Positions 5,001-55,226 of a stretch of DNA of 64,000 bases are shown piece by piece. Source of the stretch: Haplodiscus bocki (taxonomy: Eukaryota). The translations under genes and the position numbers were made by a program. The stretch lies in the NCBI GenBank assembly GCA_965655095.1, contig OZ296656.1:44640001-44704000 (forward strand), read 5' to 3'. Below the pieces are notes generated by a model, which did not search any database, had not been told where the DNA came from, and was given only the letters and a program-made list of their open reading frames with translations. The stretch's first letter is position 1; every line of letters starts with the position of its first letter.

Positions 5001-6144
5001 TCTCAATCTGTCGTGCGGAGTCATGGCCGTATTGAAATTATAGGCTTGCTAGAACGAGTTGGCAACACTTTAAAAAATCATCTTTCATGAAAAAATGAAA
5101 AATCGCTGTTGGTATGAAAAACGTACTGCAAAAAAAACTCGAAAAGCAAAGAATAATTGATTACATTGTTATTAAAAACTCATTGTTAATAAATATTTTT
5201 AAACAAAAGATTGCAAAGCTTTCAAAAAGTGTGGGGAAACCAAAGGGGCTTGGAATCTGAGCGTGAACGTGGTGGCCCTGCAATTTTCAGTGACCATGTC
5301 ATGACCAGCCAAGATTATAAAGACGCCAAACTCGTTAAGATTTGACTTCTTACTCAAATTCTTGCAAAAATTCCGACAGTTTTAATCTGAATGCTGTTTT
5401 TAAATTCTTTATTTTTTTCTTCCTGTTCATAACTCCCCTGGTTGAAAAACATTAAAATTTTGTAAGATTTCATATGTCACCGAACACTTTTTGAATGATT
5501 TTGGATGATTCATGATTCATATAAAACTTTCCATGCCTAAATTTTGTCCGCTGTTGTGATGTTTTTCAAGTTTCTTCAAATAATTACATAAAATTAGGCG
5601 GGGTTTTGTAGTTTGCTTTCAAAATTAACAAACGAAAAATAAATAAAGTTTTTCATGTTTTTGGACGCGGCTTGATTAATTTTACAAGTGAATAATTGTA
5701 AATCAAACTTACAATTTGGCCGCGCATTACATTAGAAATTACACAGATTAAGTTTATGAAAACCCACGCCGAGTCATATGTTAGCAAATAATAGCTTAAC
5801 GGTCATAGCGTCAAAGAAATATCAAATATGAACAGGTCTGAAGCGCTAGTGATTGAGTCAATAGAGGTGCGAGAACATTCACGTTTTCTATTTTACATTG
5901 ATATCTTGAACAAACGTTTGCTGCTGAAGTGTAAACATTCAAAATACATGTATGCTAGATGTCTGAATTTTCCATGTTTTATCAATTATTTGGCTGCATA
6001 CATACATGCAACTTGCATGTTTTATCTGTACGTCTCACTAGGGTCCCTTGTTTATTTGCTAGTTTGAAAGCCTTGTGCTCCACTGGGTGGTCGTTTTCTC
6101 ATATCAGCAGCTGGTTTATTTTTGGTTACATGCAGTTGACGACG

Positions 6145-6323
6145 CTACTTTTCCGGTTAAACGCTGTTAACGCCGCTATTTTTCCGGTTAAACGCCGTTA
6201 AATCCGCTATTGTGCAATGAAATGCCATTAACACCGCCGTTTTTCTGGTTAATAACGGCTTCTGTTTTGACATCCGTTAACGCCCTTGTATCGGAATAAA
6301 TTTGGCCAATGATTCGACCCAGG
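6145..6323. repeat. Subterminal repeats and terminus of a DNA transposon related to the 1-691 element
   Basis: Tandem ttttccggttaaacgc(t/c)gtta copies and gttaacgcc motifs, ending in ttcgacccagg. Confidence 0.4.
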
Positions 6324-6351
6324 TAAAACTACTCAATTAACGAAATGAACG

Positions 6352-6721
6352 TGTTGCGTATACAATAAACACGCCTTCGTTCCAGTCAAACTGAGTGAGG
6401 ATGGCTTAGCGGTAGCGTGTGCGCCTTTGAATCGATAGGATACCAGTTCAATTTCCGGTGAAAGAACTAGTTTCTTTTTTTTCTATTTTCCATAAATTCA
6501 CTAATTTATTGACCACTAGAAGTTTTTGCTATCGCACTTCTAATTACTGTCTGTTGATGTTTGTAAACAACCACATATTGATGATGTAAAATTGTTCTTT
6601 TCAAGCCAATACATCAAATTGTCCGATGATATCAGAACGTTAACGGCCGACGATAATTGTTAGTCAGTATTAATACATTATTCAGAAATTTTTATTATTT
6701 TTTGGAGAGTCATCGAAAACA
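6352..6721 (+). repeat. BEL 5' LTR
   Basis: tgttgcgta...gaaaaca; direct repeat of 14479-14831. About 13% divergent outside the tRNA-like block, with a 15-bp segment absent from the 3' copy. Confidence 0.95.
6399..6482 (+). ncRNA. tRNA(Gln)-like Pol III cassette in the 5' LTR (SINE-head-like, not a functional tRNA)
   Basis: A box TGGCTTAGCGG, CT-TTG-AA anticodon-like loop, B-box-like AGTTCAATTTCC with a T-arm stem, then a T-run at 6471-6482. No acceptor stem. Confidence 0.7.
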
Positions 6722-7420
6722 TTGTGGCCATAGAGAGGTGTCCTTTAAAGCCCGAGTATTTTGATGAACCTAGTAATTAGGTTTGAAATTTGAAACGAAT
6801 TGAACAGTCAGTGCTCGTTTCCTTTCGTCGAAAGCAGCTTGGAGCGTCTCCGGTCACACTATACCGCTAGGGATAGTTTAGCTGCTGAAGGCAAAATCAC
6901 CGACCGAGGAAACGGGAGCTCTCGAGAATTGTAAGAAAAAGCCGAAAAGAAGTGCGAGTGACGGTGAATATTTGGAAAAAGTGAAGAAAGACTTTGAGAG
7001 TAGTATGTGACCCACTGCTGAAGATTCTATGAAACGAGAATGAACCCAGCGAAGTAAAACATTGGCGATTATCTTTCACCTGAGATGATCAAAAACTTAT
7101 GACTCGTTCACGCTGATCGAATACATGTGGGAACTTTTCAATTGATGTCATTGCTCACCAGCAGAGAAGCCGGCAGATAAAGCCAACTTGTTGAGAGAGA
7201 AACTTAGATTCAGACTGAAAGCGATCGCTATAGATACTGCTCTCGAGAAGTTGTGAGCTAGGTCATCACCTTTCAACTGCAAACATCAAAAGAAAGCTTC
7301 CGTCGTATTTCGAGCTAAAGTTGAATGCTGAGCGTGGTAAATATCAGCTGTTAACAACCCGGCGTCAAAATTGCCCAAATCCGGGTCCCATGTGATTCAC
7401 CCGAAAATGTGCGAACTCAA

Positions 7421-8178
7421 TGTCTTATCTGCAACCGCCATTTTGTTAACAAAAAACGGTGAAACTCTCAGGAACGGTTTTTATATCTTTATATTCGTTT
7501 GAAGTAATACCGATAGCGAGCACCACCCCTCGAAATTTTTTGTCAAAATTTTCTTGATTGTGGAAACGTTGAATGGTGTTCCTTATTGGTGCAAGCAGTT
7601 TACATCGCGCTACTGAAACGCTAAGTCCCGAAGACAAGACATTGGAAAAGCGCAACATTTTCACAGTACCGGGACTTAGTTTGATTTATTACTCGAAAAA
7701 CCCCCAGAAGTAGTTCAAAAATCTTCTTGTATAACAGTTGATTGGTAAAACTCAGCTGGCGATTTGACACGATACGCTAAATAATTCCATTTCTGTGCGC
7801 GCAAGCAATGGTAATCGCCCATTTAGTATTTTTGAGCTACTCGAAGAAATGATTCCTTGTAACAACCAACTCCGTGTTCTGGTGTACTGTCCACGCGATT
7901 GTAACCCAGATAACTTCAACATTTTTAAGCAGCAAAAACTTTTAACGTTGAATAGAGTGAGAGACCTGATTTTTTAGACGAAACAGAAAAATTTTGATTT
8001 TTTTCGGCAGTACAAAGCCGTGCACCAGAGTCCCGAGTTGGAATTGAAAACACTCTCAGTAATTGTACATTATCAGAGCTATTTGAACGTCAAAATCAGC
8101 ACAAGGCGGCCAAAACAAATTTCGAAACGCGCTCAAAAAGCAGCACAAAACACTTCTTTGACCGTGATGTCTGCTTAA
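7421..8178 (+). pseudogene. Extra ORF upstream of BEL gag: decayed C2H2 zinc finger plus SGNH-hydrolase-like domain (may extend 5' to ~6780)
   Basis: CLICNRHFVNKKR*NSQERFLY at 7421 has C2H2 spacing with single-base changes at L/H/H. Frame 1 from 7573 reads MVFLIGASSL...TVPGLSL...AI*HDTLNNSI...KAVHQSPELELKTL to a stop at 8178, with a few in-frame stops. Confidence 0.6.
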
Positions 8179-8249
8179 CAGTAGTTTCCCGCCCTCAAAA
8201 GTTTTGTTTCATCGGTGTCCGAACTTGATTGTTTGGCTGAAGATTAGCA

Positions 8250-10720
8250 AGAACTTTGCCCCACTTGATGGTGTCCGGGCCTAATATCCTGGTTGAAGTC
8301 AAGGGCTTCCCCACTTCAGCTACTGTAAGCACCTACGCTGCATCTGTTCGTTCTCAGAGATCCCCGCTTGGTAAATAAAGTAACTTTAAGAAACACAGAA
8401 AAAAGGAACCGATGCTCCACATGATAGAGTTACAAAACTGTTCGAGAGTCGAGCCGAAATTGGAACCGAACTGATTGAAGTGCATTTTAGCATTCAAGAC
8501 ATCGTCCGGGCGACTGATAGGCACGTGCGTCTGGAGAAGCTAATCTGCACGTCTCAAGAAGTTTTAGCCTAAGCTGTTGCAAAAAAAGAGCAACATTTTG
8601 CGCTGGCTGACAAATCAAGCAATCCAGAAACACTCAATAATCAAACGGAAGGTTGATTGAATACCGTTGCCAGCGAAAATGATGATTTTCGAGTGAAGCC
8701 CCACAGTACATTGACACGCTTCAGCCGATTGATGATCAGTGCCAAAAGTCTGCAAAAAGTGGTCACAACACCGCCTCTAGTCGAACAAAAACGGCATCCC
8801 GGACGTTAAGTCAAAAACAGAAGGACATTTTGCTGAGCGAACTTGGCCGCAGGGAAGTTTAGAAGCAAAATGAGAATGCTTTACGTATTGCTAAACAGAA
8901 ACAAGAAATGGAGTTTAAAAGATTAGAGAAGGAAGAAGATCTTGAAATTGAAGCTCTGTGTGAAGAGAACAGGAAAAAAATAGCTGAAACAAAACTAAAC
9001 GACGTCGAGTTGATGGTTCACGTGTCTCAAGCCAGTCAAAATCTTGTAAAGGAAGGTTCAAAAACTAATTTGGATGATGATGCAAGTGGTCACCGGGTAG
9101 ATTAGTTGACAAACGGGTCGAAATCATATTGTGATCAACCTTCTCGGGGTGGTGATATCGAAACAGAGGAGGAAACATATGCTGGTGAGACGACAAGCAA
9201 GAAACGGCCTCACTTGCCATCTACAAGCAACGAATTAACGTTCTTACAAACACAATCTCAGATCCGGCAACCTGAATTTTCACTTGCTGCGTCGAGTCAT
9301 TTTTCGTTGAATACTGCAGCACCAGGGCTTGTGGTTCCATGAACGGCCAAAAGCACACGCCGTCGAAGCCTATGGAAAGCCAAGCAGTATTTGTTTTACC
9401 GGCAAGCAACAATTTCAGTACTGGACCATCGGCACGCCTGATAGAGCCGGAAGTTCATCAGTTTCCCCAAGTGTCACAATCTCAACAAGCCGAGCAGACA
9501 AGTTATCCACCGCGTGCGACAATTTCGACAAGAATTCCGGCAAACCATAATCTACCAAACTTGCGTGCATGGACGTTTTCAGTACAAACAACAAGTCATT
9601 AGCTGTTTGTTGTTTTTTTTCACAACCACCTGCAGCCCAGAGTTTTGCAACACATGTTGTTTCAAGTAAAGACACCACCACCTCAAGTCTGCCCGTATGT
9701 CCGATAGCAAGTGGAGGTCCCTTTTACTACTGTAATCCTCCAACTTTAGCAGCTCCGTTCATGACTACTTTGCCGGCTCCCGTTTCATCAGTTTCTTCGA
9801 GCAACCCGAATACTTACCATTTGCCGACTGCAAGCACAGTGCTTCCCCAGCAAATCGAAACTTCCGTGTCCCTGAACGATTTTGTGCAATTGGTAGCCTC
9901 TACCAAATACTACCATCTTATTGAGTGGAAACATGCCGAAAAGAACACTAACTCTCTTGAATATCATGAATAGTCTGGCTAATTCAAGAGTGCCATCGAC
10001 TCGACAGCGTTCACGAAAGATGTCGAACTGACTTTTCTCAAGACATTAGTCACTGGAAAATCAAATACAGTCATTGCTGAGTTTGCTTACTGTGGTACGA
10101 TGTACAGAGTTGCCTTGAAGATCCTTGAACGTAAATTTGGTCAGCCACAAGGTATTGTTAGTGCTTCCTGAACAAAACTACTTGACTTCAACCAGTGGTT
10201 GAAAAAGAAGGCTGAAGGACATGAGCCATAGAAAATGTCAAGTGGCAAAGGCAGGTCAGATGACAGCCCTACATCGAATGCTACCAGAACGAAACACGGC
10301 ACTAAAGTTTTTGCATCCGCCGCAAAAACTAATCAACGAAAAAATCCAGTTAACAAAAGCAAAACAACCGTCACTACCAATTCAAATTGTTTGGTCTGCA
10401 AAATCAAACGTCCTCTTTGGAAGTGTGCTGTTTTCCGACAAAAGACACCCACCGAACGCGCAAAGGCTGTAGTAGCTCAGACGCTGTGTTTCTTTTGCCT
10501 CCAGAATCAGCATTTTTTCAAACAATGCCCAGGACCCCATGAAAATAAAAAGAAAGATGTACCAAATCTCACAAAAGCCTACTACATGGTGCAGAGTGCA
10601 TCTTCCAACCCCAATCTGCAACAAAGCAACAAAACAAAGATGACGAATTTTTTGCTAAGGCAAGTAATGAATCTCGTGATCGTGAAACCAAAAGCTCCGG
10701 ACTGTCCTCCGTTATCAATG
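8250..10720 (+). pseudogene. gag: BEL gag (coiled-coil region, low-complexity linker, partly deleted DUF1759-like region, zinc knuckles)
   Basis: Charged segment 8908-9105. FKSAIDSTAFTKDVELTFLKTLVTGKS...LERKFGQPQ near 9985-10150. Knuckles CLVCKIKRPLWKC and CFFCLQNQHFFKQC. Start position approximate. Confidence 0.8.
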
Positions 10721-13700
10721 TAAAAGGTTTACTGCAAATCGCGGAGGCAGACGATTATTCCACAGACTGTTTTGAGCAGATTCTTGTCTTGTGTGACTCA
10801 GCTTGCAGTCACTTTTGGATTTCTGAAAAGTTTGTCAAAAGACTCAAACTACAGGGCCCTCCGACGACACTCACTGTTCGAGGTATTACTTCTCAGCAAA
10901 CAATAAACACCCAGAATGATGACTTCAAGTTAACACCCGTTCATTCGGGTAGCTCTTGCGCAACATTCAATATCATGCATTATGTGAGGAGAGACCTCAA
11001 CCTTGGCACCGATATCATCGACGTCAAAAATTTCAAACAACGATATCCACACCTCGAGCTAGTTACACTCGGTAAGTACAGCTACGCCAATTTAAAAAAG
11101 TTACTTTTCCAAGACGCGTTCTACCTCATCCACCCGCTGGAGTTTTTGCAATCCAACCGTCGGGATACTCCGTTTGCCATACTCCTAACGCTGGCTGGGT
11201 GTTGACTGGACTGCTTCCTTCGGCTTCAGTTCTTTTGTCCTTATGTTTTGAAACACTTGTACGAACAGACAATGACTCTGAGTTGGCCAATCAACTCCGT
11301 AATCGGTATGACTTGGAGTCGTACGGAGCGTACAAGCAAGTCGATCGAAGCTCCGCAGCTGACGCGCGAGCGCTCCGCATTCTCGAAGACTTAGCTAACG
11401 ATTTTGGGTCCCGATATCAACTCCGTTTGGTATGGGTCGATGACTGAAGTAAATTGCCAAATATTTATTATTCCGCTTTTGTACAGCTGAAGTCAATAGA
11501 GCACCGTCTTAGGAAAGATCTTAATTCAAGAGTGTTGTTCCTATACAATTCAGGAAGATTTTTTGCAAAATTGTATCGTAAAAACTGATCGATCTCATTG
11601 TTTTAATGTAGAAAATCCACAGGACTGGTACTTGCTGCACCAACTCGTACTTCATTCACATATGCTTGCCAAGGTGCGACGTGTTGTAAATGGAGCCACA
11701 AAATTCCGTGGCCATTCGCTGAAAGCCACCCTTTTCAAGGTGCCAGATTTAATTCAGAGTCTGATTCATGTTCTTCTTCGTTTCCGGCAGCACCAATACG
11801 CGGTCTGCGCAGACATCGAGGAAAAGTTTCTACATGTCGGTGTCGTTCTGACAGCTGAACGGTCTTTTTGTTCCCTGTGGCGGCAAAACCCATCAAAAAA
11901 CGTTCCAGTGTTTCAATACACCCGTCATAATTTACACCCGTCAAAACAAAGATGTGAAGGTATATGCTGGCGATAATGAAATTTCGCACGTCGTGGGTCT
12001 ATATTGAAGTCACCAGTCAGACACTTTGGTAGTAAGTCGAGGAACAAGCCCAAAACAGAAAAACTTGCCAACGCAAGGGACAGTACTTAGTTTACTGTCC
12101 ACCGTGTTTGATCTCGTCGTTCTCGTAGCACCTGATACAGTCAAAGCGCGCTTACTCCTAAAAGTTATCTGGCGTCTCAGTGGCCAAAGGTGGGACAATG
12201 AAACACCGGAAGACAGTGCGCATCAGTTTTTTGAGTGGAGCAGAGAACTGCCTTCATTGAGTTCCGAAATCATCCCACGGAGCTATTTCAAACATGAAGT
12301 TCATTGTTTAGAATTGCACGTGTTTGGTGACGGCTCTCAAACTGTTTTAAGTGCAGTAGTTTTTCTCCGACGAAAAGTTGTTTTTAACCAAAACGTCATA
12401 TTAGAATTGGCTTTTGTAATCTTTAAAGTTCGTGTTGCCCCTATGAAAGCGTTGACAAATCCGAAGCTGGGGTTGAAAGCCGCCGTGCTGGCTTTGCGAA
12501 ATAGAGCTGAAGTTCACCGCGCTATGCCGATGCAATTTGACGGAGCCTTCATGTGGACCGAAAACACAGGCGTAATTCAGTGGCTACTCTCAATTGACAA
12601 ACAACCTGTGTTGGTTGCGAACCGCGTAGCAGAATTGTTTGACTTAGCAATCACAGATGTATGGAATTATGTTCAATCCGCTGACAACCCGGCCGATGCA
12701 GGTACGTGTGGTGTTGCAGCTAGTGCTCCTCTGGAATGTAGTTGGTTGAAATGTCCTGACTTTCTTAGAACATCAGATTCGCTTTTCAAGCCACCCGACG
12801 AAATTGTCAAAAGATCAGAAAAACCAAGCTAGCTACAGAAACTAAACCAAATTCCGTAACACAAAACGCGTCAACGTTCAGCACAACTGTCACCAGTAAA
12901 TGCATCAACTTTCGGCAAGCGAAAATGCAGCTCATTGAAAAATTTTTCGCATTGTGGGGTACGTTTTGCGTGTGTTACCGAAGTTCAGTGGGCATCGAAC
13001 AAGAGATGGATCAATCATCGATCCAAATGAACTTATGCTTACAGAAAGGGAACTTTTCTGTCTAATACAACTTGAATCGTTCAACTCACAGAGGAAATGC
13101 TTGTTAAAACTTTCCACAGTCAGCAAGTCTTCGAAATTAAATAAGTTTTCGCTTTTAATGGACCCAACGGTCTATTTCGCGCAACCCGCTGAGTTAGAGC
13201 GCTGGAAAAAAATATTTTTTTTGGCATGAAACACACCGTTTTGTTAGACAAAAATCACCCGGCTGTTCAATCGTGTCTCGAAAATCTTCATCACAAACTT
13301 TGCCATCAAGGTGTTGAATCTCTCAGAGCCTCAATTCAGCAAAAGTATCTGATTATCTGACTGAGACCAACTTTGAGATCAATAGAGACTAAATGCGTTA
13401 CATGCCGCAAGCGCAAAGCGCAAGTCATCAAGTCAATCTTGGCAAATCCTCCTCGGAAACGTTTGGATTTCCGTTATTGTCCGTTCACCAACACCGGAGT
13501 TGAATATCTCGGGCCATTTTACGTGTCTGTAAAATGGTCGAACGAGAAACGATGGGGATTGCTTTTCATCTGTCTAACCACACGCTCAGTGCATTCCGTT
13601 GTGGTTTTATCAATGGACACGAGTAGTTGTGTCAAGGGGATTAAAAAAATTGTTTCATGCCGTGGTGTTCAATCAATCCTTTGCTCTAGTCAGGGGAATA

Positions 13701-14370
13701 ATTTCAATGCCATTGAAAAGAAACTTCTCCAAAACATTCGTAGCTGGAATCAACGGGTCTCACTTGATTCTCTAGTCAAAAAAGGCATACTTTGGATGTT
13801 TAACCCGCCCAGTTAACCAGATCATGGAGGTCCGTGACAACGGTTTGTAAAACTTTTGAGCATGTGTGCAGCGCTATCGTTTTAAACAGACGCCTAACTG
13901 ACGAAATACTTAGCACCACCTTTTGTGTTGTTGAACAGAGTCTCAATGAACGCCCGCTAGTTGCCGCCAGCTCAGATGCAACTGAACTCAAGGCATTGAC
14001 TCCCAACCATTTTATACTCGGATTACGGAATTCATGCTTACCGTTTCACTCTCCGAACGCCCTCGATCATCGGAAGCGCTACGTCCACGCCCAGGCCTAT
14101 CCCGACGCAGTTTGGATTAGATGGCTAAAAGAGTGCTTTCCTACTTTGAATCCTTGATCAAAATGGTCAATTTCACAAGAAAGATTCTAGAAAAATGGCA
14201 ATCTTGTTTGGATCGTAGAGCTAACAAATCCCAGAAGATACTACCCTCTAGCACGTATTGTGAATTCACAATTCAGCAAGGACACAGTAGCCCGTTCAGC
14301 TGAACTGAAAAGTTCGTCCGGAAATCTTCTCCGTCCATTAGTAAAACTCGCCCCCGTTCTTGTACCAGGC
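10721..14370 (+). pseudogene. pol: BEL pol: aspartic protease, RT (core deleted), RNase H, integrase
   Basis: Protease LCDSACS (~10789). RT KVRRVVNGA, PDLIQSLIHVLLRFRQ, ADIEEKFLHV. RNase H in 12026-12832. Integrase CVTC, PFTNTGVEYLGPF, LNERPL, ALTPNHF and a GPY/F-like tail. Confidence 0.93.
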
Positions 14371-14466
14371 TCAAACACTTCCTTTAAATTAAATTTGTCA
14401 TTATAAGCATGCCACGTGTTCTTCAACGTCACGCACTTTCGCTTTTGACAGATTCGACTTTCTTTT

Positions 14467-14478
14467 GGGCCCGGAAGA
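14467..14478 (+). promoter_or_regulatory. Polypurine tract (plus-strand primer site) of the BEL element
   Basis: gggcccggaaga immediately before the TG of the 3' LTR. Confidence 0.7.
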
Positions 14479-14831
14479 TGTTGCGTATGCAGTAAAAACG
14501 CTTTCGTCCCGGATGGCTTAGCGGTAGCGTGTGCGCCTTTGAATCGATAGGATACCAGTTCAATTTCCGGTGAAAAACTAGTTTCCTTTTTTTTCTATTT
14601 TCCATGAATTCACTAATTTATTGACCACCAGAAGTTTTTGTTATCGCCCCTCTAATTACTGTTTGTCGATGTTAGTAAACAACCATATATTGATGATGTA
14701 ATATTGTTCTTTTCGAGCCGGTACATGAGTTTGTCCGATGATATCAGTACGGTGACGGCGGACAATAATTGTTCGTCAGTATCATTGCATTGTTCAGAAT
14801 TTTAGTCTTTTTCGGAGAGTCACCGAAAACA
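14479..14831 (+). repeat. BEL 3' LTR
   Basis: tgttgcgta...gaaaaca; direct repeat of 6352-6721. Confidence 0.95.
14511..14594 (+). ncRNA. tRNA(Gln)-like Pol III cassette in the 3' LTR
   Basis: 65 nt identical to 6399-6463, followed by a T-run. Confidence 0.7.
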
Positions 14832-15051
14832 AAACGCTTCAACCACTTTTTGATTAAAACACTACTGCAATGAAAAACTATCTGTCTTGTGTTGCAACAC
14901 TGAAGATAACTCAGGGCTTGATATAAACTATATAGCGGACGTCAAAAAACATCGTCATGCTACTAACACTATCATCTTTGTTGATTTATAATTTCAAAAC
15001 CGGTATCAAACTGTTTTTTTGAATGCTACAACGGCACGTTGTGCAATAGTT

Positions 15052-17278
15052 CATCGTGAAACTGGCGCGTGCAAAAGTACCTGCGATGGCTGCAGGTCAC
15101 CCTTTTCGGAGGTAAAATTACCTGCAAATGTAGGCAAAATTTTTCGTAGGTAACAATTGCTTGTGGTTTCCGCAAGTATCTGGCAGAAATTTACCTGGGC
15201 CTGCAGGTAAGTTACGTGAAAGCTTTATCTTTCGTGTCAGGTCGGGTTTTTTCAAACCTACAGACGTTTCTTTTTGTCCATTACCAAAAAATTTGACCAA
15301 AGTAATAACTTACTGCCTTTGAAGTCAAGGGTGAACCCCTTGAAATTGAATATTTTCCGAAAAAAAATTGAACTTCTCCTTGTTGGATGTTCACTCCGTT
15401 ATCCCAAAAAATAGAGCGAACTAAAAACTTCTTCACGATCTCTAAAAAGATTGAAAACTGGCATTTGTCATTTTTTCAACATTCTCATTTATCCAGAGGA
15501 TGAAAAATGTCAAGCAAAAGTAAGATTTGGTCTTGAAACCGCTTGAAAACACAGAGTTTTTCAAAAGAGATGTAACACAACTGAATTTTTGAAAGTTTTT
15601 GGAATTTGACTAAACGGAAAAACGCATCACTTTTTGTGAAAAAAAAGTTGGAGAATCCATTTTCCCAGGAAAAGGTTGACCAAAAAGTGCTGAAATAATC
15701 CAGCAGGAAGTTTATTACGCCTTTCAGAGCTGAAGCACCAAAGAACAGTTGAGGTTTATTTAAATGTTAGAAATAGGAATCCCGAATTCGCGGAAAGTAA
15801 AATAGTAGAAAAAATGACGTAATAAAACCTTTTTTACTGAAATTAAACTCAAAACATCTTGAATCAAATTTTTGTTGAACTAAAAGCACAATGAGGACTC
15901 TTATGTTATGTACAATGAAGAGGACTATTAAGTATCCGATGCAACTTTCTTTTCTAAGTTTGGGTGCCTTCTGGTTTAATTTACCCGCGAGTAATGATGG
16001 TGTAACTCTGTAATTGCTGCTGAGGATCAATTAGTCCGTTTTCCAATTTTTCATCGTAGTTGTGTTTAGCTTTTCTACTCCGTTTACTGTGATACTTGTG
16101 TTTCGAGTGATGGTAATGGACGCTGCCAATGTATTTGCCCGTTGGTGGCCCTGCTGGTGCCGTAAAGGTTTTTTTGACCTGCAAAAATGAGAAAAGACTT
16201 GAGTTCATTGAGATGCATACTTGTCTTGGACCTGGTGCTCAATTTTTGTTGAGACATAATTGAGGGAAAATGGATACTTTTGAGGGTATTTTGAGCCGTA
16301 GGATTTCTAATATCGGTTGGTGAGCCCTAGCAATGCAATGAAACTTAATTTTTTAATGTCAGGGCGTCTTCCAGCTTAGCTTTCCTGCAAGTAGTGATAT
16401 TTTTCCGACACGGTTGCATTACCTGCAAAGTTGGGCAATTTTATGTGAGGAGAGAGGCATCTGAAAAGGCCTCACTCGCATTTGACCTGCTTTACATGCA
16501 GTTTGTTTACCGGTAAAAGTAGGTTAGATCACGCGCGTCTACTTGGCAAGCAATTCCCTCGAAATACACGCGACCGAACGTAAAAGCACGCAAATTGCGG
16601 GTCACTTCATTTACAGGATACAGTCTAACTTACATGGATTTTGGAGGTAAATTTATCCGCGGTTTGATAGCAGTTTTGCCTGCAATGACGGGTTTTTTGC
16701 CTGCAACTGATGGTATTTTGCCTGCGTTTGCGGGTATTTTTGCCTGGGATTGCGGCTACTTTTGCCTGCGATTGAAGGTATGTTTCACTGCGACTGTGGG
16801 TGTTTTTGCTTGGGGTTGCAGGTATTTTGCCTGCGTTTGCGGGTATTTTTGCTTGGGATTGCAGCTACTTTTGCCTGCGATTGAAGGTATGTTTGCCTGC
16901 GACTGTGGCTGTTTTTGCTTGGGATTGCAGGTTTTTTTTGCCTTCGATTGCGGGTGTTTTCGGCTGCAAATTGCATGTATTTTTGCCTTCAGAAGCAGGC
17001 AGTTTTGCATGGCAGTCGCGGGCGAATTTGCAAGAGTTCCACATCTAAAAACATCTGTAAAATACCCGCTATGTTCCGGTAAGTTTACATGCGGTTGCAG
17101 GCAATTCGCGTGTATTCTGCGTGAGGTGCTTGCCCCGAAGACACAGGTAAATTTACCTCTTTTTACAGGTAAATTGCATGTAACGAATGTAAACTGCCCG
17201 TGGGGCATTTCTGAATGCGGTTCCTATGTAAATTCACCTGCTTTTGTAGGTAATTTTGCACGCGCCAGTTTTACAGTG
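15052..17278. mobile_element. Non-autonomous DNA transposon with CACT-type TIRs (CMC/EnSpm-like)
   Basis: Left end catcgtgaaactggcgcgtgcaaaagtacct versus right-end reverse complement cactgtaaaactggcgcgtgcaaaattacct. Many (tt)acctgc/gcaggt subterminal motifs at both ends. Confidence 0.8.
16675..16965. repeat. ~22-bp minisatellite with ~109-bp higher-order duplication
   Basis: Unit approximately ttttgcctgcgattgcgggtat; block 16712-16820 is repeated from 16821. Confidence 0.85.
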
Positions 17279-17706: not shown

Positions 17707-17937
17707 NNNNNNNNNNNNNNNNNNNNNNNNNNNNNNNNNNNNNNNNNNNNNNNNNNNNNNNNNNNNNNNNNNNNNNNNNNNNNNNNNNNNNNNNNNNNNN
17801 NNNNNNNNNNNNNNNNNNNNNNNNNNNNNNNNNNNNNNNNNNNNNNNNNNNNNNNNNNNNNNNNNNNNNNNNNNNNNNNNNNNNNNNNNNNNNNNNNNNN
17901 NNNNNNNNNNNNNNNNNNNNNNNNNNNNNNNNNNNNN
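17707..17937. other. Assembly gap (231 N), preceded by a (gtt)n-like tract
   Basis: Run of N in the sequence. Confidence 1.
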
Positions 17938-51800: not shown

Positions 51801-54800
51801 ATTAACTTCCCCAGGCAGCAATTTTGAGAATTTCGTCAACCATCAATCAAAAAGGTTTCCATGGAAGAAAGAAAAATACTTTGCATAGTCAATGTTGTGC
51901 GGATCTTAAAAACTTGAGAGCAACAACATGTATGGCAACATCCACCAGCAAAACATATCGTGGTACCAGGTTCGTAACTACTAGACAACAATTTCATTTT
52001 CAATTATCCAAAACGAATTTTCAATACTTGTTTGGATCAAATAAAATGACTGACGTCGCTGAATTTTGGAGTATTAATATAATCAGCACTGGTGTACACA
52101 CCGACAAAATCAATTCACAAAAATGACTGTCTTAAAGCAGCTGATATCTGCCAGAAAGCATTTTCCACTTTTTTGCAAACTGTATTCAATTCAAGAAGAA
52201 AACCTGGAGGAAATTTTAGCCGAAAATGACGTAGATAGTTATGTATACCACAACTTTCTTCATTTCTCCAGGTCCCACATCGATCAAAAAACAAGTTAGC
52301 AAAGGCTCCAGCGAAAAACGTTCTGCGTTCATTCTGTTTCAATTTTGCGATTTGAAGGCACAGCTGCATTATAAGATGATCAAACTTCCAATTCACTACT
52401 GTTTCGGTGAGATTTTCCACTTCGTAATTCAAAACTCTGTGTCTCGCCCTTTCAATTTCAAAAACCTTCAAAAAAATACGGAAACGAAACTCTTCCTTAT
52501 TATTCGTTTGATCCACTGCGCTGTTAAATTTTCCCGAATGAACATTTTCTGTCTGAATTAAAATGCCCTGTTGAATGTTTTCCTGTTTTCGCAAAGCATA
52601 AAATCCTGGAAACTCTTGATAACATTGTTTACAATTGAAAGTAACCGCAGGTTTTGGAGCGGTGTTATGTTAAGCAAAAAGATGAACAAAACCTACTGCG
52701 ATATAGTAGAGAAATTGAGGCTTTGTGTGTAACAAATGTTTTAGCTGAGCATCTCTTTTTGTGCCGTACAACATTGTTTTTTTTATGTTGGATAACAATT
52801 TTTTCTCTTCAAATTTTTTTCTCGGATTGACGAAAGCTTCTCATTACGAGGTGTTCAACGGAAAGATTTCAAATAAACGTAAAAATTGATGCAACCTGAA
52901 TGTGGCACTGGAAGACGAAAAATGCCAAAAAAAGACATAGCAGGTGTTACTCAATACTTTCAATTTTTTATGGAAAACCCCATTAGAAAAAGAGCAACCA
53001 CAAAAACAAACAAACATGGCAGTAAAAACAAAAACCGTACGAGTTGTCAATCAACTTCTTTCGTTTTAGAAACCGAATGTGTCCAAAAAAAATCAATTGA
53101 AGTGGTCAAAAAGCTTGTCTATGAAAACACTTCAAGAGGAATAAGTTCTTTTTTTTTGTAGTGACAGAATGTCTGAGAAAAAACATCCTGTCGATTAACT
53201 TCCCCAGGCAGCAACTTTGAGAATTTCGTCAACCATCAATCAAAAAGGTTTCCACGGAAGGAAGAAAAATACTTTGCATAGTCAGTGTTGTGCGGATGTT
53301 AAAAACTTGAGAACAACAACATGTATGGCAACATCCACCAGCAAATACATATCGTGGTACCAGGTTCGTAACTACTAGACAACAATTTCATTTTCAATTA
53401 TCCAAAACGAAATTTCAATACTTGTTTGGATCAAATAAAATGACTGCCGTCGCTGAATTTTGGAGTATTAATATAATCAGCAATGGTGTACACACCGACA
53501 AAATCAGTTCACAAAAATGACTGTCTTAAAGCAGCTGATATCTGCCAAAAAGCATTTTCCACATTTTTGCAAACTGTATTCAATTCAAGAAGAAAACCTG
53601 GAGGAAATTTTAGCCAAAAATGACGTAGATAGTTATGTATACCACAACTTTCTTCATTTCTCCAGGTCCCACATCGATCAAAAAACAAGTTAGCAAAGGC
53701 TCCAACAAAAAACGTTCTGCGTTCATTCTGTTTCAATTTTGCGATTTGAAGCCACAGCTGCATTATTTCATGATCAAACTTTCAATTCACTACTGTTTCG
53801 GTGAGATTTTCCACTTCGTAATTCAAAACTCTGTGTCTCGCCCTTTCAATTTCAAAAACCTTCAAAAAAATACGGAAACGAAACTCTTCCTTTTTATTCG
53901 TTTGATCCACTGCGCTGTTAAATTTTCCCGAATGAACATTTTCTGTCTGAATTAAAATGCCATGTTGAATGTTTTCCTGTTTTCGCAAAGCATAAAATCC
54001 TGGAATCTCTTGATAACATTGTTTACAATTGAAAGTAACCGCAGGTTTTAGGGCGGTGTTATGTTAAGCAAAATGATGAACAAATCTTACTGCGATATAG
54101 TATAGAAATTGAGGCTTTGTGTGTAACAAATGTTTTAGCTGAGCATCTCTTTTTGTGCCGTACAACATTGTTTTTTTAGGTTGGATAACAATTTTTTCTC
54201 TTGAATTTTTTTCTCGGATTGACGAAAGCTTCTCATTAAGAGGTGTTCAACGGAAAGATTTCAAATAAACGTAAAAAATGATGCAACCTGACTGTGGCAC
54301 TGGAAGACGAAAAATGCCAAAAAAAGACATAGCAGGTGTTACTCAATACTTTCAATTTTATATGGAAAACCCCATTAAAAAAAGAGCAACTATAGGAAAA
54401 GGAACATGGCACTAAAAACACAAACCGTACGAGTTGTCAATCAATTTCTTTCATTTTAGAAACCGACTGTGTCCAAAAAATTCATTTGAAGGTGTCGGAA
54501 AGCTTGTATGAAAACAATTCAAGCGGAATAAGTTCCCTTTTTATGGTGACAGACTGTCTGAGAAAAACAATGTAAGGGATTACCAACCACAGGCAACGTG
54601 ACTGAAACTTTTCATCAACAAGAAGAAATACCCGCGACGAACGCTTGTGTGAGGAGATTGTTTGGTTTATTTTTGCAAATTTATTCTCAACTGTTAATCA
54701 AAAAGATGTACATTAAGGGAAAAAGAATTTTTTTGCACAGCCACTGTTGTGCTGAAATTTAAAACGTTGCAACGACAACATGCACAACAGCATCCACCAG

Positions 54801-55226
54801 CAAACACACCTTCTGGAGCCAAGCTCCTGAGCACAAGACCAAAATTTTGTTTTTAAATAGCCGAAACAAAATATTTAAATCTGTTTGGTTCATATAAAAG
54901 CGTTGGCGTCGCTGAATTTTGAGATCTTTAATTAATCAGCATCGGTGTACACCAGCGATAAAATCATTTCACATACTTTACTGTGTGAGGACAGCTCATC
55001 TCTTTCAAAAAGAAACTTCTCAGTTTGCGCAAACACTATTCATTTTACGAAGACAATCCAGAGGAACTTTTGAACGCAATTGACGTGGATAGTATTTTTT
55101 GTCACAACTTTTTTCACATCTGTCAGTCCCAGTATCGAATTGAGCAAGTTACCAATGGCTCTAGAGAAAAATCTCCTGCAATCAGTTGGTTCCATTTCAC
55201 AGATTCGAAGACACAGCAACATTATA
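27340..55226. repeat. Polinton-derived macrosatellite: 20 tandem copies of a ~1390-bp unit
   Basis: Landmark agctgagcatctc at 27716, 29107, 30499, 31890, 33281, 34670, 36059, 37450, 38839, 40230, 41620, 43011, 44400, 45790, 47181, 48573, 49962, 51352, 52743 and 54137 (spacing 1389-1394). Internal copies are near-identical; the outer edges are much more divergent. Confidence 0.98.

What the first reader, a model, noticed from the sequence alone, without database searches (positions are those of the whole stretch)
14511..14575. The tRNA-like block is invariant between LTRs that otherwise differ by about 13%
The 65 nt at 14511-14575 are identical to 6399-6463, including several intact CpGs, whereas I count roughly 38 differences in the other ~290 LTR positions. 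At a uniform 13% rate, zero changes in 65 nt has probability near 1e-4 (hand estimate, window chosen after the fact). Since the element's ORFs are dead, this suggests post-insertion constraint, local protection from mutation or methylation by bound TFIIIC/Pol III, or gene conversion.
Basis: partly seen in the sequence, partly recalled or inferred. Interest (0 to 1): 0.75.

Follow-up and report, generated by a model that had tools for sequence, protein, structure and literature searches.

The report
Identical 65-nt patch in old LTRs
Two end-repeats of a long-dead BEL/Pao retrotransposon share a perfectly identical 65-base patch although they differ by about 12% elsewhere; this is real but only modestly beyond chance, and it most likely reflects ordinary copy-correction (gene conversion) between repeats, not a protected or selected tRNA-like gene.

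Summary
Bases 6399-6463 and 14511-14575 are identical. They lie in the two LTRs (6352-6721 and 14479-14831) of a degenerate BEL/Pao element. Elsewhere the LTRs differ by 35 substitutions and 4 indels.

Corrected for choosing the longest run afterwards, it becomes 0.008-0.02.

The cold zone is not confined to the block. The next 65 columns carry only 2 substitutions and 2 one-base indels.

"tRNA-like" is weak:
- ARAGORN at default and the Rfam tRNA model find nothing.
- Only a poor cloverleaf appears in the 3' LTR, at an 80% threshold that 4% of shuffles also reach.
- That unit's 5' part is not invariant.

CpGs are not depleted anywhere, so intact CpGs say nothing about methylation. Published data show that active tRNA genes mutate faster, not slower.

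The best reading is a short gene-conversion tract, between the two LTRs or from another copy. Rivals are chance, a polishing artefact and selection on a Pol III-type module.

The decisive test is other copies of this LTR family. I left it out because I could not tell whether fetching them is barred.

The parts
6352..6721 (+). 5' LTR (370 nt, TG..CA ends)
   Evidence: Direct repeat with 14479-14831.
14479..14831 (+). 3' LTR (353 nt, TG..CA ends)
   Evidence: Aligned to the 5' LTR: 317 identical columns, 35 substitutions, 4 indel events.
6399..6463 (+). Invariant 65-nt block, 5' LTR copy (49% G+C; the rest of the LTR is 31%)
14511..14575 (+). Invariant 65-nt block, 3' LTR copy
6464..6528 (+). 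Low-divergence shoulder to the right of the block (2 substitutions and 2 one-base indels in 65-66 columns). Its partner is 14576-14640.
6384..6398 (+). 15 nt present only in the 5' LTR, abutting the left edge of the block
6402..6412 (+). Box-A-like motif (TRGCY...YGG core as given in PMC10886601). Its partner is 14514-14524. The box-B core GGTTC is absent; AGTTC lies at 6443-6447 / 14555-14559.
   Evidence: motif definition.
6475..6482 (+). T8 run starting 12 nt after the block (terminator-like for Pol III). Its partner is 14587-14594.
14500..14579 (+). Poor 80-nt cloverleaf ('tRNA-Ala tgc'), found only at 80% of ARAGORN's threshold and only in the 3' LTR
   Evidence: 12 of 300 shuffles also give a hit at that threshold.
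6722..14478 (+). Internal region of the element. There is a TGG-containing candidate primer-binding site just after the 5' LTR and a short purine run just before the 3' LTR.
10549..14403 (+). Broken pol of BEL/Pao type. It holds a weak aspartyl-protease remnant, an RT remnant, Peptidase_A17, an integrase remnant and DUF5641.
   Evidence: Pfam scans. tblastn with relatives, with only counts and outer bounds printed.
6347..6351 (.). Candidate target-site duplication, left copy (GAACG). The right copy is 14832-14836 (AAACG), matching at 4 of 5 bases.

Best explanation
The two LTRs belong to one old, dead BEL/Pao insertion. They have diverged by about 12-15% nearly everywhere. A short stretch was later re-copied from one repeat onto the other by non-allelic gene conversion (homologous repair), or onto both from a third homologous copy. 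That erased the accumulated differences over a tract of at least 65 nt. The tract may originally have been about 130 nt and has since picked up four small changes on its right side.

The block carries a decayed tRNA-derived, Pol III-promoter-like motif set. This kind of module is known in some LTRs. It was part of the LTR before insertion and is not itself the cause of the invariance. At most, a Pol III-type site could have favoured the break that started the repair.

Shown here: the identity, the counts, the modest excess over chance, the shoulder, the lack of CpG decay and the weak tRNA-likeness. Inferred: the conversion event itself, its donor and its timing.
For: - A 65-nt perfect run sits in LTRs with 39 differences elsewhere. 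The next longest runs are 22, 20 and 17.
- P = 0.008-0.02 after correction for choosing the window. This is the same kind of test that GENECONV applies.
- The cold zone extends past the tRNA-like part. Columns 47-177 hold 4 events. The left flank has 5 substitutions in 32 aligned columns, and the right part 28 in 194.
- A 4-of-5 target-site duplication supports a single insertion, so both LTRs started identical.
- The setting is repeat-rich and gene-poor, next to a 27-kb tandem array with copies up to 99.8% alike. Sequence homogenisation is visibly at work there.
- Literature: converted regions were predicted in 25% of LTR pairs, mostly 100-1000 bp long and longer within one element (PMC7251063).
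Against: - There is only one LTR pair and no outgroup or donor, so conversion is inferred from pattern alone.
- The tract is shorter than most predicted LTR conversion tracts.
- Both edges of the perfect run are indels. With 4 of 39 events being indels this is unexpected by chance. It would fit homology-limited conversion from a third copy, or a polishing artefact, as well as LTR-to-LTR conversion.
- The overlap of the run with the G+C-rich, tRNA-like part is left as coincidence unless the site itself provokes repair.
Confidence: 0.45

Rival explanations
1. Chance: with 39 differences scattered over about 356 sites, one long gap between differences can happen, and the reader picked it out afterwards.
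For: The corrected probability is 0.008-0.02, not 1e-4. Outside the block the run lengths look as expected.
Against: The probability is still only about 1-2% for this pair. The run also coincides with the one G+C-rich, motif-bearing part of the LTR. G/C sites elsewhere differ more often than A/T sites (16% against 10%), so the block should have collected about 8.6 substitutions.
Confidence: 0.15
2. Selection or binding constraint on a Pol III-type (tRNA-derived) module. Both LTR copies would be kept as TFIIIC/Pol III sites, for example as an insulator or a small-RNA gene, in the manner of the Pol III modules of Helenus and Cassandra LTRs.
For: A box-A core with YGG is present, a near-miss box-B core lies 41 nt downstream, and a T8 run starts 12 nt after the block in both LTRs. 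A weak cloverleaf is found in the 3' LTR. tRNA- and 5S-derived promoter modules in LTRs are documented (PMC10886601).
Against: - There is no tRNA call by ARAGORN at default or at 90% of its threshold, and none by Rfam at E <= 10 in either LTR.
- The fold is no better than shuffles.
- The box-B core GGTTC is absent.
- A promoter-only constraint would cover about 20 nt, not all 65.
- The 5' part of the cloverleaf has 2 substitutions and a 15-nt indel between the LTRs.
- The cold zone continues into A+T-rich sequence beyond the T-run.
- The element is 8.5 kb, far beyond what Pol III-driven TRIMs reach.
Confidence: 0.12
3. Assembly or polishing artefact. Reads from the two LTRs, or from other copies of the block, were mixed during consensus polishing, and this wrote the same sequence into both places.
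For: The identity has sharp edges that coincide with indels on both sides. The region is repeat-rich, with an assembly gap 2.9 kb downstream of the 3' LTR. Nothing in the window can exclude an artefact.
Against: Collapse usually affects longer stretches, and the rest of the LTRs kept 39 differences. The block has no further copy in the 64-kb window, so it is not a very dense repeat.
Confidence: 0.1
4. Mutational cold spot or protection by bound proteins or from methylation.
For: The block differs in composition from the rest of the LTR (49% against 31-37% G+C).
Against: - There is no CpG depletion in the window, the element or the LTRs, and only 7 of 35 substitutions touch a CpG.
- G/C sites in these LTRs change more often, not less.
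- Active tRNA loci mutate 7-10 times faster than average (PMC6130373).
Confidence: 0.05
5. The two LTRs come from two diverged family members, joined by recombination between elements. The differences would then reflect family evolution, in which the block was conserved for LTR function.
For: It would explain conservation of a functional U3 module without post-insertion selection.
Against: The flanking pentamers match at 4 of 5 bases (chance about 1.6%), as expected for one insertion. No second copy of the family is in the window.
Confidence: 0.05

Closest known systems
Gene conversion between the LTRs of one retrotransposon (GENECONV-type tracts; Jedlicka, Lexa and Kejnovsky 2020, PMC7251063)
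   Same: A contiguous stretch of identity lies inside otherwise diverged LTRs of a single element. It is detected as a longest identical fragment beyond expectation.
   Different: The perfect tract is short at 65 nt, or about 130 nt with the shoulder. Tracts in plants are mostly 100-1000 bp. This is a single case in an animal BEL/Pao element, and no donor or outgroup is available.
Helenus (tRNA-derived) and Cassandra/Ajax (5S-derived) TRIMs with a Pol III promoter in the LTR (Kojima 2024, PMC10886601; Maiwald et al. 2023, bioRxiv 10.1101/2023.07.14.548913)
   Same: A small-RNA-gene-like piece with a box-A core lies inside both LTRs in sense orientation. It is not a functional tRNA by prediction.
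   Different: Those are elements of 0.3-1.3 kb without coding sequence. This one is 8.5 kb with pol remnants. The box-B core is imperfect, and no tRNA model recognises the block. Their conservation is seen across many copies, whereas here only two LTRs of one copy were compared.
True tRNA genes: conserved body, hypervariable flanks (Thornlow et al. 2018, PMC6130373)
   Different: In tRNA genes the core is kept by strong selection on a folded, functional RNA. This block fails tRNA detection, and its putative 5' acceptor side is not conserved.

Membership tests
BEL/Pao LTR retrotransposon | Two LTRs in direct orientation with TG..CA ends, flanked by a short target-site duplication | tested here: met
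   LTRs of 370 and 353 nt, TG..CA ends, pentamer duplication matching at 4 of 5 bases.
BEL/Pao LTR retrotransposon | pol with the Pao-type signature domains (Peptidase_A17, DUF5641) in the order PR-RT-(A17)-IN | tested here: met
   Peptidase_A17 E=4.9e-24 and DUF5641 E=7e-6, plus a weak aspartyl protease upstream. RT and integrase remnants were placed by tblastn with relatives. Relatives all carry PF05380.
BEL/Pao LTR retrotransposon | Recognisable gag | tested here: not met
   No family hit in any open stretch of 45 codons or more between 6722 and about 9300. It is either decayed or too divergent.
tRNA gene or tRNA-derived Pol III unit | Cloverleaf recognised by tRNA finders or a covariance model | tested here: not met
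   ARAGORN at default and at 90%: none. Rfam at gathering score and at E <= 10: no tRNA hit in either LTR. There is only a poor hit at the 80% threshold, in the 3' LTR, with 4% false positives in shuffles.
tRNA gene or tRNA-derived Pol III unit | Box A and box B cores at tRNA-like spacing, with a T-run terminator downstream | tested here: inconclusive
   Box-A core plus YGG is present. The box-B core GGTTC is absent, with AGTTC 41 nt downstream. A T8 run starts 12 nt after the block (cores as defined in PMC10886601).
tRNA gene or tRNA-derived Pol III unit | Pol III transcription or TFIIIC binding | not testable with these tools
   This needs expression or occupancy data.
Helenus / TRIMp3 | Miniature non-autonomous element (about 0.3-1.3 kb) without coding sequence | tested here: not met
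   The element spans 6352-14831 (8.5 kb) and has pol remnants.
Helenus / TRIMp3 | tRNA-derived sequence in both LTRs, conserved across the family's copies | not tested
   Only the two LTRs of this copy were compared.
Gene-conversion tract | Identical fragment longer than expected from the pair's overall divergence | tested here: met
   P = 0.008-0.02.
Gene-conversion tract | Identified donor, or a phylogenetic conflict between tract and flanks | not testable with these tools
   This needs other copies or an orthologous locus.

The most novel reading that the evidence does not exclude
A full-length-type BEL/Pao LTR carries a tRNA-derived Pol III module, a relative of the Helenus idea outside miniature elements. 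After the element died, the host kept that module unchanged in both LTRs, for example as a TFIIIC-bound boundary or a small-RNA gene.
Probability: 0.07. Interest if true: 0.6.

Novelty: new member of a known kind. Interest (0 to 1): 0.25.

Why it matters
If the patch is a conversion tract, it is a small, ordinary reminder that LTR divergence underestimates element age and that patchy identity should not be read as constraint.

If other copies showed the same columns to be cold, it would extend small-RNA-gene-derived LTR modules from miniature elements to a coding-type BEL/Pao lineage. It would also hint at host use of such a module.

Tried and rejected
- tRNA detection: ARAGORN on the window and on the LTRs at lowered thresholds; Rfam at gathering score and at E <= 10 on both LTR copies. 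No tRNA or other credible RNA family was found. The weak JUMPstart, PK-HAV and similar hits are chance-level.
- RNA fold of the block: no better than shuffles.
- Other copies of the LTR or block in the window: none.
- Link between the block and the primer-binding site (a captured primer tRNA): no complementarity beyond chance.
- Methylation reading: rejected on CpG counts.
- My first guess that the host was a mosquito is dropped. The only named relatives of the element's protein are from the acoel Symsagittifera roscoffensis at 49-51% identity. The nearest unnamed ones reach 59%. The host stays unidentified.
- Host genes in the window: none recognised.
- The large representative protein search, structure prediction and collection scans were not used. 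The family scans had settled the protein.
The N run 17707-17937 was left as it is.

Full report
**What is there**

The window holds one LTR retrotransposon at 6352-14831.
- Its LTRs are 6352-6721 (370 nt) and 14479-14831 (353 nt). Both begin TG and end CA.
- The flanking pentamers GAACG and AAACG match at 4 of 5 bases, as a decayed target-site duplication of one insertion would.
- The interior carries remnants of a BEL/Pao pol: Peptidase_A17 (E=4.9e-24), DUF5641 (E=7e-6) and a weak aspartyl-protease match.
- Relatives found with the element's own A17 piece place an RT remnant upstream and an integrase remnant downstream.

The pol is dead.
- Between about 11.6 and 13.75 kb it shows at least one frameshift and about eight in-frame stops against relatives. 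One search printed only counts and outer bounds.
- The longest open stretch is 274 codons.
- The RT and integrase remnants seen by tblastn gave no Pfam match, and no gag is recognisable.
- I did not make an exact count for the whole pol. That would need a full-length relative, which I did not fetch.

**The observation**

- 6399-6463 and 14511-14575 are identical over 65 nt, with 5 CpGs.
- Elsewhere the LTRs differ by 35 substitutions (22 transitions, 13 transversions) and 4 indel events.
- The next longest identical runs are 22, 20 and 17 nt.
- The block is bounded on the left by a 15-nt stretch present only in the 5' LTR (6384-6398), and on the right by a one-base indel.

**Is it more than chance?**

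- For a window fixed beforehand, P = 2.3e-4.
- With separate rates for G/C sites (16% differ) and A/T sites (10% differ), about 8.6 substitutions were expected in the block, and P = 1e-4.
- The window was chosen afterwards. The probability that the longest identical run reaches 65 is 0.008-0.019.
- A likelihood-ratio scan for the coldest segment is matched by 9 of 400 shuffles.

**The cold zone is wider than the block**

- The 65 columns to the right carry only 2 substitutions and 2 one-base indels.
- The left flank has 5 substitutions in 32 aligned columns, and the far right has 28 in 194.
- A segment of 131 columns (6399-6528 / 14511-14640) with 4 events fits the data almost as well as the 65-nt segment with none. 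By hand from the counts, the log-likelihood gain is about 7.6, against 8.4.
- This shoulder is A+T-rich sequence beyond the T-run. It is not tRNA-like.

**Is the block tRNA-like?**

Only weakly.
- ARAGORN finds no tRNA in the window, nor in the LTRs at default or 90% thresholds.
- Rfam finds nothing at gathering score, and no tRNA match at E <= 10 in either LTR.
- The RNA fold is no better than shuffles, z = +1.03.
- At 80% of ARAGORN's threshold a poor 80-nt cloverleaf appears in the 3' LTR only (14500-14579). 4% of shuffles also give a hit at that threshold.
- Using the motif cores given by Kojima 2024 (PMC10886601), the box-A core with YGG is present (6402-6412 / 14514-14524). The box-B core GGTTC is absent, with AGTTC 41 nt downstream. 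A T8 run starts 12 nt after the block.
- So a decayed tRNA-derived, Pol III-promoter-like module is plausible but not demonstrated.
- The 11 nt that form the 5' side of that cloverleaf differ at two positions between the LTRs, and the 15-nt indel falls inside it. The unit as a whole is therefore not invariant.

- Methylation. CpG observed/expected is 0.91 for the window, 1.02 for the element and 1.35-1.49 for the LTRs. The LTRs keep 15 and 20 CpGs after about 12% divergence, and only 7 of 35 substitutions touch a CpG. CpG decay is not operating here, so intact CpGs in the block carry no information.
- Protection by bound Pol III machinery. Published work shows the opposite: active tRNA loci mutate 7-10 times faster, and their bodies are kept by selection (PMC6130373).
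- Constraint.
  - A promoter-only constraint would cover about 20 of the 65 nt.
  - A constraint on a folded RNA conflicts with the failed tRNA tests and the disturbed 5' side.
- Gene conversion.
  - It fits the contiguous tract, the shoulder and the single-insertion evidence.
  - It is common in LTR pairs: predicted in 25% of plant LTR pairs, with tracts mostly 100-1000 bp (PMC7251063).
  - The neighbourhood is a repeat-rich, gene-poor stretch next to a 27-kb tandem array with copies up to 99.8% alike.

**What remains odd**

Both edges of the perfect run are indels, and the run sits on the one G+C-rich, motif-bearing part of the LTR (49% against 31-37% G+C). Three ideas would explain this:
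- conversion templated by a third copy that shares only the block;
- repair started at a Pol III-type site;
- polishing with reads from other copies.

None of the three can be told apart inside this window.

**Comparison with what is known**

- LTRs with small-RNA-gene-derived modules are known: Cassandra and Ajax (5S) and Helenus (tRNA). [quoted passage not shown]
- Those named groups are miniature, non-coding elements. This one is 8.5 kb with pol remnants, so it is not a member.
- Patchy LTR identity through conversion is also known.
- I therefore file the finding as a new member of known kinds, with low to moderate interest.

- I did not fetch other copies or relatives of the element's DNA by pattern, look-up or accession. 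BEL/Pao elements are classed as a virus family of animals (Belpaoviridae; from my own knowledge).
- The word search showed no protein relative above 59% identity. LTRs of the relatives it found would probably not align in any case. Only copies of this same LTR family would decide the matter.
- The N run 17707-17937 was not touched.

1. The motif cores used here are those printed in PMC10886601.
2. One search printed the coordinates of stop-to-stop open stretches of the element's three forward frames. I used them only as references for the piecewise family scans. They are not a list of gene breaks, but they border on one. I did not repeat or carry them further.

Noticed in passing
window 27505-54595: Tandem array of a 1390-nt unit, about 19.5 copies. 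Copies are 95-99.8% identical to a reference unit; some sit near 99% and the rest near 95-97%, which suggests a higher-order repeat. Several units carry a 159-169 aa open frame on the minus strand, with no Pfam match in the two tested. A decayed partial unit follows at 54697-55226 (69% identity).
   Followed up: partly
window 16674-16988: Short tandem repeat (22-nt unit, also read as a 109-nt unit) inside a 228-aa open frame that has no Pfam match.
   Followed up: partly
window 17707-17937: A run of 231 N (an assembly gap or a masked stretch), 2.9 kb downstream of the 3' LTR. It was left as it is.
   Followed up: no
window 6130-6300: Just upstream of the 5' LTR, a locally repeated motif rich in GTTAA/CGCC words recurs several times. 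The element may have landed in another repeat.
   Followed up: no
window 6722-9300: About 2.6 kb after the 5' LTR has no open stretch with any family match, so no recognisable gag. It is either heavily decayed or foreign sequence.
   Followed up: partly
window 12008-12829 (protein search): The element's best-preserved piece has no relative above 59% identity among 5.8 billion proteins. The only named relatives are from the acoel Symsagittifera roscoffensis (49-51%). The host is unidentified and is probably not an insect, as I had first assumed.
   Followed up: partly
whole window: CpG observed/expected is about 0.9-1.0 overall and above 1.3 in the old LTRs, so this genome shows no sign of methylation-driven CpG decay.
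   Followed up: yes
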